Below, one piece after another: positions 17,271 to 62,400 of a stretch of DNA of 64,000 bases (position 1 is the first letter of the stretch; the number at the start of each line of letters is the position of its first letter). Position numbers and translations under genes: made by a program. Source of the stretch: Phallusia mammillata (lineage: Eukaryota). The notes beneath the pieces were generated by a model. That model made no database searches, was not told the DNA's origin, and was given only the letters and a program-made list of their open reading frames with translations. The DNA is taken from the NCBI GenBank assembly GCA_965637545.1, contig OZ281500.1, positions 12,028,001 to 12,092,000 of the forward strand, read 5' to 3'.

Positions 17271-17598
17271 TGGCATGTGACTCGCTCGCGACAAGTGCCA
17301 CAGTTGCAGGATCGAATTCGACGAGCGAGCTCCCTACCATTTCGCAGGTTAAAAGTCGATTTAGACAAAAAGTTTGCGCGTAGAAAAAGTTTTTATAAAA
17401 GCAATAAACGTTGTAAGAGTTTTAACGTGTAAAATGTGTAGCAAACTAACTGTGTTTCTGGGATGATGTTCAGGAATTGCGAGGTGATTGGCGTATGTGT
17501 GTACTAACAGTGAACGAAATTGACTTTCAGTCTGTTATCAGCGATATGTTTTGTTGATCATTTGTATGTGTATATTACAGATTTTGAATTTTTTTTTG

Positions 17599-19365
17599 AT
17601 GGTGGTTGCGGCTGTAAAGTGCAAAAGTAAAATTTTAAACCCACGACAAATGACGAAGGATAGCAATATGGCGTCACTCCACGCATCTGCCAGTGAACAG
17701 AACATGTTTCAAGTTGCCTACGATAAAACATGGAAGGCTCAAGAGTGCACAAACAAACAGCAAAGCAACGGTGCGCTGACCACCTACACTCTGCACATTA
17801 AGAACGATTCGATCACAGCCACCCCGGAACCACTGACAGAGGTCCGCCGAGGGGGCGGTGTCGCAGGGAAAAATCCTTCCAGCGTTGCCAGACGGAATGC
17901 CCGCGAACGCCGGCGAATTCGAAACGTGAACAGCGCCTTCGATGAACTTCGGCAACATGTGCCGAACGGCGAACGGAACCGCAAAAAGATTAGCAAGGTA
18001 TTTTCGAGAGACCTAACCCAAAAATCTAAGGCGTTTGTACATGTATCTCATTTTTTAGGCTACTTTATACAAGTGGCCTACGTTTTGTTACAAAGCTTTT
18101 TAAAACTAGTCGTACTGTAATCGACTGTCTTAGCACATCGCTTTGACACGAAATTAATCAAACACTAATATACGAACATTTCTTTGTTTACACAGGTAGA
18201 CACGTTGCAGTCCGCGATTGAATACATCAAAGCGCTGGAAGAACTTGTCCAAAACCGACGCTCAAAAACAACAGCCGCAGCTGAAGCCGAAGCCAGCAAG
18301 GAAAACGCGCCAAAGCTGAACAAATGCACCAAGCGAAACGAACAATCGCCATCGCCCCCTGACACACCTGAACACCGGAATAATGGCTCCGATTGCGATG
18401 ACGTTATTTTTGTAAAAGAACTCAGCAATTTTGCCGAATCCCCAGCGCCAAACAATGAGCAAAAATCGGCAATGGAAAGCAGTGGTAAAAAGGTTCAACG
18501 CCCAGCAGCACTCACCGAATCCATGCTTAAAGCTTTCGACGTTATGCTTCAAAAGTGTGCTTCCGAGAGAAAGGCGTCTGCTTCGCGTCCCGAGTCGGTT
18601 CAGACTCTTGACAATGCTGAAGAACAAACAAAAAATCCGTGCCAAGACACTAGCGCTACGAGCAACTTCCATACGGACAACTGTCACCCCGATATCCAGC
18701 CAAAACGAAGCGACAGCGGTTTTTCCGAGCTTTTCGAAGACCAGGGCGATACCAGCAGCGAAAGCTCTTTTCGGCCTCGCCAGTCTTCCTTAGAACTAGA
18801 TCAAAGCCCACCTAGCATGGATTTTGTTGCGTCACCAATTCACAGTGAAACTTTACAAGCAACCGTTGCTGAAACATCAGTTGGAGGGTTCTTGCAGCAA
18901 CTTGAAGATTTCACGCCGTCGTTTGAACAAATCAACACACCAAACAGCCAAGTATCAACATTTGAGGACGCTCAGTTACCCGACGAATGGCAAAAGCCTT
19001 TAGGCCGATTTCAGCAGTTTTATCCTGAAGCCATTGCTGAAAATTGCCCAGCACCACAGATAAACTACTTACCGTTGCCCGCAAGCAATGCTAACTGGCC
19101 AAACGGCGTACAGGAAATGGAACATCAAAATTTTCATGAACCCTTTGATGTTCAAACCGTATCCGTGCCGAGTGGCCTTGACCAAATCAATCCAACTCTG
19201 GACTTTTTTCCCGGTCCTGACAGCAACAACAACTATTCCTTTGTTGAGACTACACCAACATTTATGAACATGAACGCCAACCAAGGCTGCGAACAACCGA
19301 CATTCAGCCAATCGCTTTTCTCCGCTCGAGGAGTGGATGAGAGTTTTGCTGTCGCGCAGTGGTAA
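17599..19365 (+). CDS. ASCL: Achaete-scute family proneural bHLH transcription factor (about 522 aa)
   Basis: Exons 17599-17997 and 18196-19365. The spliced bHLH reads SVARRNARERRRIRNVNSAFDELRQHVPNGERNRKKISK|VDTLQSAIEYIKALEEL, matching ASCL1 AVARRNERERNRVK...HVPNG...KKMSKVETLRSAVEYI. It ends in an acidic/aromatic tail with a terminal Trp. The start could be 17599 or 17650. The paralogue is not assignable. Confidence 0.92.
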
Positions 19366-19518
19366 TGCCTAAACCACGCTTTTTTACGCTTTTACCATTT
19401 TCCTTTGTTATACCACACAATCATAAAAGCTTGATAATCCAACAATCATTTGTAGTTTAGTTTACCAAGTGCCTATCTGCCATCCATGCGCAACAACTTC
19501 CAAATATACAAGTTGACA

Positions 19519-19655
19519 CACTGCCTTAACCATGCTGCCGTACTGCTGTCCTAAAGTTTCTAATATTATCACTGCCAACCTTGTGCGTACTAACTTTTTT
19601 CTTTGCTCTAGTGCCTAAATCGTTAAGTCGTCTCATGAGACAAACGTCACTGCCA
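19519..19655 (+). promoter_or_regulatory. Cluster of miR-34/449 seed matches in the Ascl 3' UTR
   Basis: CACTGCC 19519-19525, CACTGCCA 19570-19577 and CACTGCCA 19648-19655, with an overlapping miR-124 7mer-A1 match TGCCTTA at 19522-19528. Confidence 0.55.
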
Positions 19656-22045
19656 ACAAAACGTACATGTTTGAGATCGTTTTAATTTATCGCGTGCGTA
19701 CTGTCCATTTATGTCAGCAATGAAATCAAATAAGAATTTATTTTGTCTATTGCAAGGAAATTTACAACCAGAAGCCTGCATGGACGTGTTGTTTTAGGTT
19801 TATGCTATTGAAACATATAGCTATAATTTCCATTTACCGCCGTTCGTTTTCTTTGATTCTAAGTTTTGTGTCCGGGCGTTTACTTGCTTTGCGCTAAATA
19901 AATTCACAAATAAATCGATAAAAAAGTTTTATGGGTTTAAACGGTGTTTTAATCAAAAGTACAGATGAACATTTTGCGCTAATGGTATATGTTTGTCGTT
20001 CAGCAAATTATCCAATTGCGACGAACTGTTTATTTGTGGGATAGTTCACCTAGGCGCGAAACATCACAACACGTTCACGGTACAAAAGAGTGAACGCTGT
20101 TTATTTAGTCCTTTGCCATTCAGCAGCTCAAAACAAGTGTCGCGTGCGCTTGGGCACACATCGTTCGAAATCTTTTCGGGGCAATGATGTGCCCTTAAAC
20201 CGGTCAAATAATCGACTGGAATTTCGTACAACAATACGTCAAACCACTAATTCAATAACTAGCGAAAACATATCTCACATTAGGCTTTTGTGCGTGTCCA
20301 ATCTACGTTTTTGTGAAGACCAACAAAACGCTTCCGAATCTGTAGATCGGCTATTATTTTTGTGGTTTACTTTTCGTGCAGATACCGTTAGCAAATATAT
20401 TAGTCACGTTTTGTTTAACAGCGATGAATCGTTGTGTGGAAATCTTTTAGCCTGGCATTGTACTGCCGCGGTGAGGTTTGTCGTGAAAAGTGATTTCAGG
20501 GTTAGCAAGCCATTCCGGCCTTGCGCGTGCAAATATTGAAGTTTCACTTCTCGATATCATCGATTGGCGATGGGCCGATCTTGGACAAATTGCAGCTAGA
20601 AGTAAGTCGTGACTAAAATCGACAGCCTGTCCAGTATCGAGTTAACAAAAGATGGGGGATAATTTCCGTATGAGGCGAACTAATGCTTTTGTGAACCCCA
20701 AAAGAAGTTTATGGGCCACGATAAGTTTTTGAGTATAGCGGGGACGTAAAAGTTAAAAGGCAAAAAATGTATGTTTTTTGTTGTAATTAGTATGTATGTA
20801 AATATGTATGCTACTATAAGAGAAATTCGGCATCCAATTCTACAGTTTGGAACTGGTTGTAGGATAATTTGAGTCAACACTCCAATTTACCATACATTAA
20901 CGTAGCAGAAATGATGACAGGGAGCAGAAAAAAGAAAATCTTACGTAGGTCTGACGGTAGGACAGGTGGACGGCGGGCTTCGCGAAATCGATAGAAAATA
21001 GATTAATGTTCGCGATATTGATGGTCAAACAACGCGGGGTGTTCGAGTAAAAACGCAAGTGGGTTAAGTTGTCGAAAGCAACGTATGGTAACGAAACAAA
21101 TGGTTTAATATTTCAAAGCATCAGAGCAAAAATTGAATAATGTGTAAATCAAAGCCAATTGGTATGGAAAGATTTTTTTTGTTTTCGCAAAACCAACCAA
21201 GTTTTATTTTTCCGAGAATGTTTATAATTTTTTTTTAATGTTTCGTGTCACGTTCGCTGTTTTATGAAATAGTGTGAAATGGCGTGTGTTTTCAATGTAA
21301 ACAATCAATTTATGTAAAAAACGAAACGATGTTTCAATGTACTTTGTTTGTGTATATCGACGTAAAATTTGTTTACGTCAACGTATTGTTACTTCATCGA
21401 ACATGTAAAGAGTTATAACCTAGAAGAGATCACGTCGTAAACACTCGACTTCATTAAAATGCGGATTTCGATTGCTTGGCGATATTTCAAGAATCATCAA
21501 GAATCCCGGTATTCAAATATTCACACGCCTTCTATTTCTTGCTCCTGTCTGTTTGCAAAACTTTACATCGGCCCCATACGACGCTACCGTTTATTTGTTT
21601 TCGTTGTACGCGGCGCGCACTGGGAAATTTAATGCGCTATTGTCTGCTATGTTACACTAATCTGCTGATTGGGGGTAGATTCATCTCGTCCAAGATGTTT
21701 ACTTAATCCAAAAGCAACGTTGTTCGCATCAAGCGTTTTGTTTTTGCAAACAAGATTCGGTGTTACGAGCAGATGTTTCGTTTGGTAATTAAAAGTTCAT
21801 GATTCTAAATGTCTATGAGAGAAGTACTGATTTGTTTAGTTAATATGTTTCAAAACGTTCCAAACAACTAAGTTAAATTGGCGATTTTAAAAGAGACATG
21901 TACTTCTTGTACCCATTGGCCAACATATTTGGCCTCTCTGTTAGTTCATATAAGCTAGCCCATCCCAAAGTGGGGTCCGCGAAACGATTTCTGATGAACC
22001 CGATGAGCTTAAGTTTTTCTAGAATCTAACTGTGTATTTTCATTA

Positions 22046-44997: not shown

Positions 44998-46035
44998 CAG
45001 TGGTTCTCAAAGTATGGGTCGCGACCCAAACATGGGTCGCGCAGGGTCAAAAAATGGGTCGCGCTATAGTGATTGAACGAACTATTACTGCATTAAGCAA
45101 ACACAAACAAACTTACTTAATGCAGTAGCAAAGTCAACTCACTCGACCACGTTGTACAGTAAAATGAACCAATCATTACCATATACAGACGACAATAGGC
45201 TTCCAACTTTACTGTGACGCACATGGCGATTGTAACGTCGTAACACGGGGAATAGTAGGACAAGTATTCGTACAAGGAAACATGTTTAGATTTGGGATTC
45301 ACTTCTATCAACGATCATGCTGCAAAGCCACTATGTGTGTTGTGTTATGTAGTGTTGTCGAACGAATAGGCCTCGTTAAGCCTGCAGCCATTTTGGCATG
45401 CTATGCGGCGACGACGTGGCCTCGAAATTGCAGTCCGTTTCGTTGTCGAACAGGACAGTTAAAAGTCGAATCACAGAATCACAGACTTTTACTGAATATA
45501 AATATCAAGTGGTCTCTTGAATGAAAAATAGAGGCGTGCATTGAAGAATTATGAAGGACAAATTTCAATTTAAGAAACACGCTACGATAAATCAATCATT
45601 GTTTCATAGTACTGTGTACTACAACTGGCTGTCTGCGTCTTTTTTCATGCATATCAGAAGAAAATAAATTTTTTGATCACAGTACGCCAGGCCCATTGAA
45701 GGCGCTATACCGAATCAGCCGGTCACCAAGCATTCACCACCATATGGCAAGGCATAGGCTAGAAAAATCCAGCCTGCGGTGGGATTCGAACCCACGACAG
45801 GAGTCTTTCCGGGACTCGCGCTCTACCAACTGAGCTACAACAGGCCCAGTGTAGAATCCGCCGAAAGTCGAATCACAAGCACCGTTGCCTGCCTCGTATG
45901 CTGCACATATCAGCTTCGTAGTAGGGGATCGCCAGATATGTTCATCTTAACATTTTTTGATGTTTGAAGCTTGGGTCGTGAGATGTTCATATAACTCAGA
46001 TTTGGGTCGCGGTCAAAAACGTTTGAGAACCACTG
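44998..46035. mobile_element. hAT-type MITE carrying a nested SINE
   Basis: TIR CAGTGGTTCTCAAA / TTTGAGAACCACTG. Perfect TSD gtgtaaag (44990-44997, 46036-46043). GGGTCGCG subterminal repeats. Confidence 0.9.
45476..45863 (-). mobile_element. tRNA-derived SINE
   Basis: tRNA-like head at 45845-45772 (TAGCTCAGTTGGTAGAGC A box, GAGTC/GACTC stem, GTGGG-TTCGAAT-CCCAC T arm, imperfect acceptor stem) followed by a non-tRNA body. A 14-bp direct repeat aaagtcgaatcaca (45462-45475, 45864-45877) is a candidate TSD. The boundaries are inferred. Confidence 0.7.
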
Positions 46036-59400: not shown

Positions 59401-62400
59401 AAATCAGTAACCAATTTTCGCACCCCCTTTCAAATCACTAACCAATTTTCGCTCCCCCTTCTGTAATTGCTTAAATAGAATAGACCTAACCAACCTTAAT
59501 GATTCAGCATCCCCGCACCCCCTAGGAACAGTTCTCGCACCCCTTGGGAACCCCTGCTTTAGTGGGAAAACATCCCAAAAAGGTTAAGAAACACTGCCAT
59601 AGGACGTGGTCGCGGACTGCGCGTTACAAACGAGCGATTTAATTGCTTTAAAATTGAAAAAAAAAATTAATCGTTCAAGATTAACTCGACAATTATAGTT
59701 TATGTAGCCTATGCCACAGTTATCCCCAAGTTTGCTATTTGTTCACGACAACAAGAAACATTTACATTTTCGCAATACTAAGACTTCACAACCAAGCAGA
59801 ACAAATATGGGCAGGGCCCAACGATTTAAGCATACCTTTGTAATATAAAACTTTAAAGCAATGCTTATAGGAATGCTGGCTAAAGTACGATTGCTAAAAT
59901 AAAAATTTCCGATTTTAATTTATAGACATAAAGTGCCGCGAACGGGCTGCACCCCTGTCCTCCCTCTGATTTTTTTAAGGAAAAAAATCTGGGAATAGGT
60001 TTAAAAATCCCAGGATTTCCTAGGGTAAGCTACCAAGCCGCATCGCCTTTGCTTCTTGCAACCGTGTCTGTTAAATAAACGAAGCATTTTCACTTTGGGG
60101 TGATTTTCTGATTCGTGCCAACTGATTTTTCAGTCCAATACAATGGTTTACATCAAAAGCGATTTTCGTTTACCTGTTGCAGAAACAGTTAAATTAACAC
60201 TTTTCCATTTCATATACTGCCGAGTGTGCCGGTCGCAGTAAATTGTTGCTAATATCGGTTCACTGCGGGAAGCTTCGGTGCAACCAGCAATGTCGTAAGA
60301 TCCTTCAATTGATGTTAAAACTTCCACAAACATCTGATACATGTAACATTGATTGTCCACTTCCCACTCGACAAAAATAGTTGTGGTGCCAATTCTAAAC
60401 AGGAATCGTATAACGTAAGCTGTGTTACTGAAATCAACACATACTAAACCTAAGCTTTTAGTAAACTTAAATCAGTCTGTGTTTTTCGTTATGCGATGTA
60501 ATATGAATTATATCGATTTCGCCGCTTTAATGGCATCCTCATTTCTTATTCAAATAGAGTTGAGTAAATATTATCCGCAACTGGGATCGTTTGTAATCAG
60601 CGCGTGACGATTTCGGGCCGAAGCACATATCACATTCTTTTATTTCAAGATACTAATTATATAACTTTTCACCGTTTTATATTTAGTTGCAAGCCTTTTG
60701 CTAATCCCGTTTTGACGAGGACTGAGTTGGATGTTGCAATTTTGTCGCCCGCTACTGCAGCTATACGGAACCAGTAAAATGTTTTTGGACGTAGCTCGAT
60801 AAAGTTGTACTTTCGTTGATGTGAATCCACTATGTGGTACTCAGTTGATCCAGAATTTGAAACTGCACGTGAACAAAAATATTAGTTAATTTAGCTTCTG
60901 CACAAATTTTAGAAAGTAATATGAGAGTCAGATTGCAGAAGAATACAACACATAATTAATAGTTTTGGTAGTCAAATCCAACATCAATTTTATGGCAAGG
61001 GCCTCACCTGAAGCTGATATATTGTAGAAGTCGACGAATTCGTCACCTTCAATTGTCCAACTCATCAGAAGGGCAGTTTTTTCCTTCGACTGTGTTGTGA
61101 GATTATTAAAAGAAGTTATGTTGGCTGTGTATGGCTGCGTTCTTCCATACAAAGGAATTGCTGGACCCAGGGCGCTATGAAATTCAGTTGTGATATCGAC
61201 GCGATATCGCTGGCCCGGTAGCAGCACCAAAGTTTCTGCTTCTGTAGATAAATAGAATTGGTAAATTTGTGTTTAACTCGGAGAAACATTCTCTTAAGAC
61301 CACAATTACCAATATCAAAACATTTTAAGGAGCAACATGTGTTAACGTCTGTTGAAAATGTACTGTAAACTGAAAATAAATCCCCAATATATTTTTTAGC
61401 AATAAATCGTCCAATGCCATACCTATATAATAGGCGCGATGCATATCGGAACTTATTGACGTTTGGTTTAAAAATAGGTCATCCCCGTCCTCATCAACGG
61501 CGGACACTGCTATTTTGTAGTGCTCCACCCCGCCGCGTAGTGGCGGATCCCATGCAATGACGTCCATTCCGGGCAGCAAAATGTCATCGAGCGGCACTTC
61601 AGATCTTTCAAAAAAAAAACAGTTTTTAACATTAAAACTGCGAAACAAAAAATCATAGACTTTTGATCGCTCACCTGACATTTATGGCCGCATCTGGTGG
61701 GATTATTACAATGCTGCTTTCCTGCGCGGTAATTAATTTAGGCAGATGACTGGCAGAAGGTTCGGCAAAAACAATCACAGTGTACGAGGTACCAGGTTCA
61801 GCGTCATGTATCAACAATAAAATATCTTCAGGATTTTGAACTGGTGTAAGTGTGCGGCTTAAAAGGGCCTGGTTCTGATTCGATCTAAAATACAAGTGAC
61901 AAAATAAACATCGCAATTCTACGAACTTCAAAACAAACAAAGATAAAGGTTGCACAACAATATACAGGTCGTTACGTTTTAACCGACATGGTTGACTACT
62001 AATACGTGTCACATATACCCTTAAAATCAACCACATAACCAGACCAGAAAAAATGCAAAAAAGGAGAACAACTTGAAGACAATGCGAGACTCAAGTGAAC
62101 CAATTACAAATGACTTACCCTGTTTTTCCATAGCCTGCGAGGAAGCTTATAGAACTGACGTCAAACTGCGTGAAAGCAAAGTAGTCATAGGACAATGTGA
62201 CATTAGTTGTGATAATTCCACCTCTGTATTCCGAATTTACTTGCAAGGTAACAGAAAGTCGATCCATAGTGGTAAGACACGAATTCACGTCTTGCAATTT
62301 CCTTAAGTTACCGATGCCGTTCGCACTAACAGAGCTTGATAATAAATTAAGTGGAGGTTCATTGTTGTGAAAACAGGAGAACTGCAAATCTGTTATTTCC

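What the first reader, a model, noticed from the sequence alone, without database searches (positions are those of the whole stretch)
19519..19655. Three miR-34/449 seed sites (two 8mers) plus a miR-124 site within 137 bp of the Ascl 3' UTR
Seen: CACTGCC at 19519, CACTGCCA at 19570 and 19648, and TGCCTTA at 19522 overlapping the first, with further GTGCCT at 19469 and 19611. A given 7-mer is expected about once per 16 kb under uniform composition, so three in 137 bp is striking. Established: CACTGCC complements the miR-34 seed (GGCAGUG) and TGCCTTA is a miR-124 7mer-A1 site. Both miRNAs are linked to Notch and neuronal differentiation. Inference: post-transcriptional shut-off of a proneural gene that complements the Hes sites in its promoter. 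I am not aware of this link being described for an ascidian Ascl.
Basis: partly seen in the sequence, partly recalled or inferred. Interest (0 to 1): 0.7.

Follow-up and report, generated by a model that had tools for sequence, protein, structure and literature searches.

The report
miR-34 sites in sea-squirt Ascl.b UTR
Three binding sites for the microRNA miR-34 lie in the transcribed tail (3' UTR) of the sea squirt Phallusia's nerve-cell-specifying gene Ascl.b and recur in the same gene of three other sea squirts, so this is a credible but untested case of microRNA control of a proneural gene.

Summary
CACTGCC occurs at 19519, 19570 and 19648, the last two as 8mers, and only once more in the 64 kb. 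The gene is Phallusia mammillata Achaete-Scute a-like2, taken here to be Ascl.b. Spliced RNA contigs from three studies run from about 17580 to 19911-19925. The 3' UTR is therefore 19366 to about 19920 and holds all three sites.

Three sites in one UTR would still turn up a few times genome-wide by chance. The stronger evidence is an independent test on other species. In the 600 nt after the stop codon of eight other ascidian Ascl.b genes, canonical miR-34 sites recur in three species at similar distances. That is 4 sites against 0.25 expected (P about 1e-4), and all are on the sense strand. Among 37 conserved microRNA seeds, miR-34 is the clear outlier. Ciona, Clavelina and one unnamed species have none.

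A mir-34 hairpin lies in the same metagenome samples as one of these relatives. Its mature arm is identical to Halocynthia miR-34.

The miR-124 site is real but not beyond chance (P 0.125 here, 0.06 across species).

Mouse Ascl1 is already a predicted miR-34 target, so this is a new member of a known kind. An unexplained motif, CAATCAT, is even more enriched in these UTRs.

The parts
19519..19525 (+). miR-34 site 1, 7mer-m8 (CACTGCC). A contiguous 16-nt stretch, 19511-19526, can pair with miR-34 nt 1-9 and 11-17.
   Evidence: for the position; duplex with ascidian miR-34 is -24.0 kcal/mol, in the top 2% of shuffles of the upstream 18 nt.
19570..19577 (+). miR-34 site 2, 8mer (CACTGCCA), within the 11-mer TCACTGCCAAC
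19648..19655 (+). miR-34 site 3, 8mer (CACTGCCA), within the 11-mer TCACTGCCAAC. The 12-mer CACTGCCAACAA is identical to the Styela clava site.
19522..19528 (+). miR-124 7mer-A1 match (TGCCTTA) overlapping miR-34 site 1. Not beyond chance.
19366..19920 (+). 3' UTR of Ascl.b, about 555 nt. AATAAA lies at 19897-19902 and 19909-19914.
   Evidence: spliced RNA contigs end at 19911, 19918 and 19925. for the poly(A) signals.
18196..19365 (+). Last coding exon of Ascl.b (helix 2 of the bHLH and a long C-terminal region), ending in stop codon TAA
17581..17997 (+). Exon 2: 5' UTR remainder, ATG at 17599, and the basic-helix 1-loop part of the bHLH. Introns lie at 17484-17580 and 17998-18195.
17466..17483 (+). 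3' end of the non-coding first exon. A TATA box lies at about 17251. The exon is joined to 17581 in one RNA contig.
19418..19449 (+). Two copies of CAATCAT (19418, 19443), the most enriched 7-mer in Ascl.b 3' UTRs across ascidians. Its trans-acting factor is unknown.
   Evidence: 11 copies against 0.68 expected, with none on the antisense strand.
19547..19553 (+). TGTCCTA, a 7-mer shared by 4 of 9 orthologous 3' flanks. Unexplained.

Best explanation
The three CACTGCC(A) elements are microRNA response elements for miR-34 in the 3' UTR of Phallusia mammillata Ascl.b. This proneural bHLH gene marks the tail-midline neurogenic epidermis that gives rise to ciliated epidermal sensory neurons. Argonaute loaded with miR-34 (seed GGCAGUG) would bind the three sites. 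Sites 2 and 3 would pair through the seed only, and site 1 through the seed plus nt 11-17. The effects would add up and speed deadenylation and decay or reduce translation, which would sharpen or shorten the Ascl.b pulse. Shown here: the seed matches, their place in the expressed UTR, their recurrence on the sense strand only in other ascidian Ascl.b UTRs, and a conserved miR-34 in ascidians. Inferred: that miR-34 is made in P. mammillata, that it meets Ascl.b mRNA in the same cells, and that it represses it. The overlapping miR-124 match may add feedback from differentiating neurons, but it has no statistical support.
For: The sites and the clustering are real. Spliced cDNA contigs from three studies cover 17579-19925 with the 198-nt GT..AG intron removed, so the sites lie in the mature mRNA. 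No alternative poly(A) signal lies upstream of the sites. In an independent cross-species test, canonical miR-34 sites sit at +219 (species A), +179 and +251 (species B) and +197 (Styela 8mer). The Phallusia sites are at +154, +205 and +283. Three of 8 species have a site (P 0.7-1.6e-3), and 4 sites are found against 0.20-0.27 expected (P 0.6-1.7e-4). With only the three secure orthologues (species A, species B, Ciona), 2 of 3 carry sites. All 7 sites are on the sense strand and none is antisense (binomial 0.016). In an unbiased ranking of all 16,384 7-mers over the nine flanks, CTGCCAA, CACTGCC and ACTGCCA rank 2nd to 4th. miR-34 is the outlier among 37 conserved seeds. No segmental duplication explains the repeats. 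Halocynthia has miR-34 (PMC5399378). A mir-34 hairpin with an identical 22-nt arm lies in the same JGI samples as species A (Rfam mir-34 E 2.8e-7, MFE z -2.9). Mouse Ascl1 is a predicted miR-34 target and responds to miR-34a gain and loss (PMC3372529).
Against: There are no sites in Ciona robusta, Clavelina or the L008 species, so the link is not universal. miR-34 was not shown in P. mammillata, and its expression domain in any ascidian embryo is unknown to me. UTR ends in the other species are not confirmed by RNA, and Styela has no AATAAA within 600 nt. Orthology of the Styela, Clavelina and Logan genes rests on the VDTLQSAI signature and an unresolved bHLH tree. The recurrent bases AAC after the seed match are not explained by miR-34 pairing. 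Site spacings of 51 and 78 nt are, from my general knowledge, wider than the range usually linked to cooperative action. Three-site clusters are expected a few times genome-wide by chance (plus my estimate of UTRs scanned).
Confidence: 0.58

Rival explanations
1. The conserved element is a longer or shifted motif, with core CTGCCAA(C), read by another trans-acting factor such as an RNA-binding protein, a tunicate-specific microRNA or a 5'-shifted isomiR. On this reading the match to the miR-34 seed is partial coincidence.
For: Sites 2 and 3 share the 11-mer TCACTGCCAAC, and Styela shares CACTGCCAACAA. CTGCCAA is the second most enriched 7-mer. It also occurs without the CA prefix in species A (+325) and Styela (+138). 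The same UTRs carry another strongly enriched motif with no known reader, CAATCAT, so unknown readers plausibly act on this UTR.
Against: Site 1 and the first species B site have CACTGCC followed by TT, not AA, so the shared core is the miR-34 seed match. From my own recall, I know of no conserved microRNA with seed UUGGCAG and no RNA-binding protein with this motif. miR-34 exists in ascidians with exactly the matching seed.
Confidence: 0.15
2. The cluster is a chance event with no function. A reader scanning thousands of UTRs against many seeds will meet such clusters, and the few sites in other species are coincidence.
For: The probability of three or more 7mer-m8 sites, summed over 37 seeds, is about 1.2e-3 per UTR. 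By my estimate this gives several chance cases per genome. Three of the six orthologues with long flanks have no site. The UTRs cannot be aligned, so positional homology cannot be shown.
Against: The cross-species test was specified in advance by the Phallusia finding and gives P about 1e-3 to 1e-4. The sites are strictly on the sense strand. They sit at similar distances from the stop codon. The motif ranks among the top 7-mers in an unbiased scan.
Confidence: 0.17
3. The motifs act at the DNA level, as transcription-factor sites of a downstream enhancer that overlaps the last exon.
For: In Ciona the midline enhancers of Ascl.b lie downstream of the gene (regions do1-do5; PMC7710358).
Against: All 7 sites in four species are on the transcribed strand, which is not expected for orientation-independent factor binding. 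They lie within the mature mRNA at a constant distance from the stop codon. No transcription-factor motif that I know matches. Ciona, the species with the mapped downstream enhancers, lacks the motif.
Confidence: 0.05
4. miR-124, made in differentiating neurons downstream of proneural factors, also represses Ascl.b through the TGCCTTA site at 19522. This would form a negative feedback loop.
For: The 7mer-A1 match is real. Species B has TGCCTTA at +328 and the same composite CACTGCCTT at +179. Styela has an 8mer, GTGCCTTA, at +352. [quoted passage not shown]
Against: One such site is expected in this UTR with P = 0.125, and recurrence in 2 of 8 species has P = 0.06. The site overlaps miR-34 site 1, so both microRNAs cannot bind at once. 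The GTGCCT matches at 19469 and 19611 are only offset 6-mers.
Confidence: 0.3

Closest known systems
miR-34/449 regulation of the Notch and proneural pathway in vertebrates (Notch1 and Dll1 in ciliated airway cells; Numbl, with Ascl1/Mash1 as a predicted target, in mouse neural progenitors)
   Same: Same microRNA family and seed, and the same pathway. Mouse Ascl1 is a TargetScan-predicted miR-34 target, and its mRNA and protein fall with miR-34a overexpression and rise with anti-miR (PMC3372529). Notch targeting by miR-34/449 in human airway epithelium is cited as verified (PMC4063677). As in the airway case, the cells concerned in ascidians are ciliated.
   Different: In the mouse study the direct target validated was Numbl, not Ascl1. 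The ascidian gene is Ascl.b, a tunicate Ascl paralogue with a long C-terminal region. Here there are three sites in one UTR. Nothing has been tested functionally in ascidians.
miR-124 control of Notch signalling in Ciona epidermal sensory neurons (Chen, Pedro and Zeller 2011, as summarised in PMC4063677)
   Same: Same tissue and gene network, namely midline sensory-neuron specification by proneural bHLH, Delta/Notch and Hes. [quoted passage not shown]
   Different: The validated Ciona targets are Notch and the Hes genes, which are the anti-neural side. Here the target would be the proneural gene itself and the main microRNA would be miR-34. Ciona Ascl.b has neither miR-34 nor miR-124 sites.
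Drosophila 3' UTR motif boxes in Notch-pathway and proneural genes (Brd box, GY box, K box, proneural box), later shown to be microRNA seed matches
   Same: Short, strand-specific motifs that recur in multiple copies in the UTRs of neurogenic-network genes and were found by sequence inspection. This comparison is from my general knowledge and was not tested here.
   Different: The motifs and microRNAs differ (miR-2, miR-4, miR-7, miR-11 and miR-79 families). No sequence relationship was tested or is expected.

Membership tests
Canonical animal microRNA target site (miR-34) | Perfect match to miRNA nt 2-8 (7mer-m8), or to nt 2-7 plus A at t1 (7mer-A1), or both (8mer) | tested here: met
   One 7mer-m8 and two 8mers. 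The seed GGCAGUG is taken from Halocynthia miR-34 and the species A hairpin.
Canonical animal microRNA target site (miR-34) | Site lies in the 3' UTR of a mature, expressed mRNA, more than 15 nt after the stop codon | tested here: met
   Spliced RNA contigs from three studies span the sites and end at 19911-19925. The sites are 154-290 nt after the stop codon.
Canonical animal microRNA target site (miR-34) | The cognate microRNA is encoded and expressed in the same organism | tested here: inconclusive
   miR-34 is reported in Halocynthia. A mir-34 hairpin with an identical mature arm lies in the metagenome samples that hold species A. The P. mammillata genome outside this window could not be searched, and the window holds no microRNA gene.
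Canonical animal microRNA target site (miR-34) | Preferential conservation of the site in orthologous UTRs | tested here: met
   Sites occur in 3 of 8 other ascidian Ascl.b 3' flanks against about 0.25 sites expected (P 1e-3 to 1e-4). All are on the sense strand. They are absent from Ciona, Clavelina and L008, so conservation is partial.
Canonical animal microRNA target site (miR-34) | Co-expression of microRNA and target, and seed-dependent repression | not testable with these tools
   This needs small-RNA data or in situ hybridisation, and a UTR sensor assay.
Canonical animal microRNA target site (miR-124) | Seed match in an expressed 3' UTR, found more often than chance and conserved | tested here: inconclusive
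   A 7mer-A1 is present. Chance of occurrence is P 0.125, and recurrence in 2 of 8 species has P 0.06.
Achaete-scute (Ascl) bHLH family, tunicate Ascl.b group | bHLH domain of Ascl type, and orthology to Ciona Ascl.b | tested here: met
   Pfam HLH, E 7e-10. Exon 3 is 100% identical to the UniRef entry 'Achaete-Scute a-like2' of Phallusia mammillata. Conserved C-terminal motifs are shared with the Ciona proteins. The VDTLQSAI signature is absent from the a-like1 paralogue. The equation a-like2 = Ascl.b (formerly Ash2) rests on the literature and my own reading.

The most novel reading that the evidence does not exclude
miR-34 control of an Achaete-scute proneural gene is an ancestral feature of tunicates plus vertebrates. 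It would be retained in Phallusia, Styela and two other ascidians and in mammalian Ascl1, and lost in Ciona. On this reading the Ascl.b 3' UTR is a conserved post-transcriptional control hub. It would also carry a second, stronger and so far unassigned element, CAAUCAU, with 11 copies in 5 species, read by an unknown RNA-binding protein or tunicate microRNA.
Probability: 0.2. Interest if true: 0.65.

Novelty: new member of a known kind. Interest (0 to 1): 0.5.

Why it matters
Proneural bHLH factors must be expressed as short pulses, and how the pulse ends is less well understood than how it starts. Ascidian tail-midline sensory neurons are a simple, countable read-out of lateral inhibition. 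In them only miR-124 acting on Notch and Hes has been shown. A miR-34 to Ascl.b link would put a microRNA on the proneural side of the switch. It would connect the ciliated-cell microRNA family miR-34/449 with ciliated sensory-neuron specification in a non-vertebrate chordate. It would also suggest that the predicted mammalian miR-34 to Ascl1 link is ancient. It can be tested directly by electroporation in Phallusia. Ciona, which lacks the sites, offers a natural negative control.

Tried and rejected
1. Segmental duplication as the source of the three sites was rejected. The only repeat is the 11-mer itself.

2. A poly(A) site upstream of the sites was rejected.

3. A sequence footprint from extra contigs of species A gave nothing. 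L004, L010 and L011 are the same species with only 2 SNPs in 650 nt.

4. The Logan contigs L007 and L009 give only about 185 nt of 3' flank, so they carry little weight.

5. The 558-aa 'protein' P0002 is a gene-calling artefact that read TGA as W. The true stop codon is at L001:5285-5287.

6. 3' supplementary pairing is notable only at site 1 (top 2% of shuffles). With 7 sites tested this is not significant.

7. CAATCAT as a miR-219 site was rejected. Only 4 of 11 copies have the preceding A needed for a 7mer-A1. A literature search for the motif gave only incidental sequence matches.

8. The Rfam scan of the window found only a tRNA and no microRNA gene.

9. A search for 'cin-miR-34' found no papers. 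Of the 47 papers that mention miR-34 and Ciona, none of the 15 listed addresses Ascl.

10. The C. savignyi locus could not be fetched.

11. The bHLH tree does not resolve the tunicate Ascl paralogues.

Full report
**Observation.** CACTGCC occurs at 19519, 19570 and 19648 on the + strand, and only once more in the 64-kb window on either strand, at 59592.
- Sites 2 and 3 read CACTGCCA, which is an 8mer. Both sit in an identical 11-mer, TCACTGCCAAC.
- TGCCTTA at 19522 overlaps site 1. GTGCCT is at 19469 and 19611.

**The gene.** The sites follow a three-exon gene.
- A non-coding first exon ends at 17483, with a TATA box at about 17251.
- Exon 2 spans 17581-17997, with the ATG at 17599, and encodes the basic region, helix 1 and the loop. 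Pfam HLH matches at E 7e-10.
- Exon 3 spans 18196-19365 and ends in TAA.
- The exon 3 product is 100% identical to the UniRef protein 'Achaete-Scute a-like2' of the ascidian Phallusia mammillata.
- I equate this gene with Ascl.b, formerly Ash2. [quoted passage not shown]
- In P. mammillata it is expressed at early tailbud among the orthologues of the Ciona caudal peripheral-nervous-system genes (PMC7710358).

**Are the sites in the mRNA?** Yes.
- Assembled contigs from three public studies (X1, X2, X15) each cover 17579/82/89 to 19911/18/25 with the 198-nt GT..AG intron removed. A fourth, low-depth run shows the same joint. Genomic DNA cannot give that joint, so these are transcripts.
- One contig also carries 16 letters that match 17466-17481. 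This defines the upstream exon.
- The contigs stop 10-25 nt after the only poly(A) signals in the UTR, AATAAA at 19897 and 19909. No AATAAA or ATTAAA lies upstream of the sites.
- The 3' UTR is therefore 19366 to about 19920, and the sites lie 154, 205 and 283 nt after the stop codon.

**Is the cluster more than chance?**
- Within this UTR, three or more CACTGCC arose in 0 of 20,000 dinucleotide shuffles. A Markov/Poisson estimate gives 1e-5.
- The search space matters. Some 7-mer reaches three copies in 30% of shuffles, mostly AT-rich words.
- Summed over 37 conserved microRNA seeds, the chance of three or more sites is about 1.2e-3 per UTR.
- By my rough estimate of a few thousand UTRs scanned, a genome-wide reader would meet a few such clusters by chance. 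The cluster alone is suggestive but not decisive.
- No segmental duplication accounts for it.

**Independent test in other species.** I fetched the 3' flanks of eight other ascidian genes that share the Ascl.b signature VDTLQSAI and, for the closer ones, the C-terminal motifs.
- They are Ciona robusta, two unnamed species from ENA/JGI assemblies (A and B), Clavelina, Styela clava and three Logan contigs.
- One called protein had read TGA as W. The true stop codon was set by homology.
- In the 600 nt after the stop codon, canonical miR-34 sites occur as follows:

| Species | Site type | Distance after stop |
|---|---|---|
| P. mammillata | 7mer-m8, 8mer, 8mer | +154, +205, +283 |
| Species A | 7mer-A1 | +219 |
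| Species B | 7mer-m8 and 7mer-A1 | +179 and +251 |
| Styela clava | 8mer | +197 |

- The Styela 12-mer CACTGCCAACAA is identical to Phallusia site 3.
- Against dinucleotide shuffles, 3 of 8 species with a site has P 0.7-1.6e-3. Four sites against 0.20-0.27 expected has P 0.6-1.7e-4. Both hold for flanks of 400, 600 or 800 nt.
- With only the three secure orthologues (A, B and Ciona), 2 of 3 carry sites.
- All seven sites are on the sense strand and none is antisense within 600 nt (binomial P 0.016).
- In an unbiased ranking of all 16,384 7-mers by total count over the nine flanks, CTGCCAA, CACTGCC and ACTGCCA rank 2nd to 4th.
- Among 37 conserved microRNA families, miR-34 is the outlier, with 7 sites in 4 species. 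The next families have 4 sites.
- Ciona, Clavelina and the L008 species have none, so the feature is recurrent but not universal. The UTRs cannot be aligned, so positional homology is unproven.

**Does the microRNA exist in ascidians?**
- Halocynthia roretzi has a reported miR-34 with seed GGCAGUG (PMC5399378).
- A pattern scan of metagenome contigs found the same 22-mer in two contigs from the very JGI samples that hold the species A Ascl.b contigs.
- It sits in a hairpin with MFE -37.8 kcal/mol and z -2.9. It matches Rfam mir-34 at E 2.8e-7, 38.9 bits. That is below the gathering score of 53.4, and the alignment shows a 38-nt insert in the loop.
- That the hairpin belongs to species A is an inference from the shared samples.
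- I could not search the P. mammillata genome beyond this window. The window has no microRNA gene.
- With this miR-34, site 1 pairs over 16 contiguous target bases (19511-19526) with nt 1-9 and 11-17, at -24 kcal/mol. This is in the top 2% of shuffles but is one of seven sites tested. The other sites are seed-only.

**miR-124.**
- The 7mer-A1 match is real. Species B has a 7mer-A1 and repeats the composite CACTGCCTT. Styela has an 8mer.
- One such site in this UTR is expected with P 0.125, and 2 of 8 species has P 0.06.
- The idea is biologically attractive. In Ciona, miR-124 is switched on by proneural bHLH factors in these same neurons and targets Notch and the Hes genes (PMC4063677).
- Statistically it remains open.

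**Mechanism proposed.** Argonaute loaded with miR-34 binds the three sites and lowers the stability or translation of Ascl.b mRNA, which limits the height or duration of the proneural pulse.
- The seed matches, the UTR location, the recurrence across species and the existence of the microRNA in ascidians are shown here.
- Expression of miR-34 in P. mammillata, overlap with Ascl.b in the same cells, and repression are inferred.
- Rivals are listed separately: another reader of an extended CTGCCAA(C) motif, chance, or a DNA-level enhancer. The strict sense-strand bias argues against the enhancer reading.

**Comparison with what is known.**
- None of the 15 top-ranked of the 47 papers that mention miR-34 and Ciona addresses Ascl, judged by title and abstract. 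A search for 'cin-miR-34' found none.
- In mouse, Ascl1/Mash1 is listed as a TargetScan-predicted miR-34 target. Its mRNA and protein fall with miR-34a overexpression, and its mRNA rises with anti-miR. Only Numbl was validated there as a direct target (PMC3372529).
- This is therefore a new member of a known kind, with a possible deep chordate origin.

**Side observation.** CAATCAT is the most enriched 7-mer in these UTRs.
- There are 11 copies in 5 species against 0.68 expected (P 2e-10). None is antisense, and two are in Phallusia at 19418 and 19443.
- It is not generally enriched in the window, which has 10 copies on the + strand and 7 on the - strand.
- It is not explained by miR-219 or by any motif I could find.

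**Verdict.** The miR-34 reading is plausible, with cross-species statistical support, and I put it at about 0.58. The miR-124 reading is open. Function is untested.

Noticed in passing
window 19418-19424 and 19443-19449; L001 +50, +330, +391; L002 +23; L003 +199, +235; L006 +127, +301, +431 after the stop codon: CAATCAT is the most over-represented 7-mer in ascidian Ascl.b 3' UTRs. There are 11 copies in 5 species against 0.68 expected (P 2e-10), and none is antisense. It is present even in Ciona. No known microRNA seed or RNA-binding-protein motif could be assigned.
   Followed up: partly
window 19547-19553; L001 +171; L008 +455; L009 +12: TGTCCTA is shared by 4 of 9 orthologous 3' flanks and ranks top in the species-presence test (P 1.3e-5 uncorrected). 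It is unexplained.
   Followed up: no
window 17466-17483, joined to 17581: The Ascl.b transcript has a non-coding first exon downstream of a TATA box at about 17251, followed by a 97-nt intron (17484-17580). One RNA contig shows this through 16 letters that match 17466-17481.
   Followed up: partly
L021:4038-4139 (-) and L042:2393-2412 (-): A mir-34 precursor-like hairpin lies in JGI metagenome contigs from the same samples as the species A Ascl.b gene. Its mature arm is 22/22 identical to Halocynthia miR-34, and the loop is unusually long (a 38-nt insert relative to the Rfam model).
   Followed up: partly
L001:4001-5677 (protein P0002): The metagenome gene caller read the true TGA stop codon (L001:5285-5287) as tryptophan. 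This added 129 spurious residues translated from the 3' UTR.
   Followed up: yes
window 19583-19591 and 19694-19702: The 9-mer GTGCGTACT is repeated in the UTR. The first copy runs into TACTAAC, which resembles a branch-point or Quaking-type element. It was not examined further.
   Followed up: no
window 45772-45844 (-): A tRNA gene (Rfam tRNA, 39.1 bits) is the only Rfam family hit in the window.
   Followed up: no
L005 -231 and L007 -118 relative to the stop codon: CACTGCCA 8mers lie inside the annotated coding sequence near its 3' end in Clavelina and in the Logan P0007 transcript, where it encodes P-L-P. This could be chance or a coding-region site.
   Followed up: no
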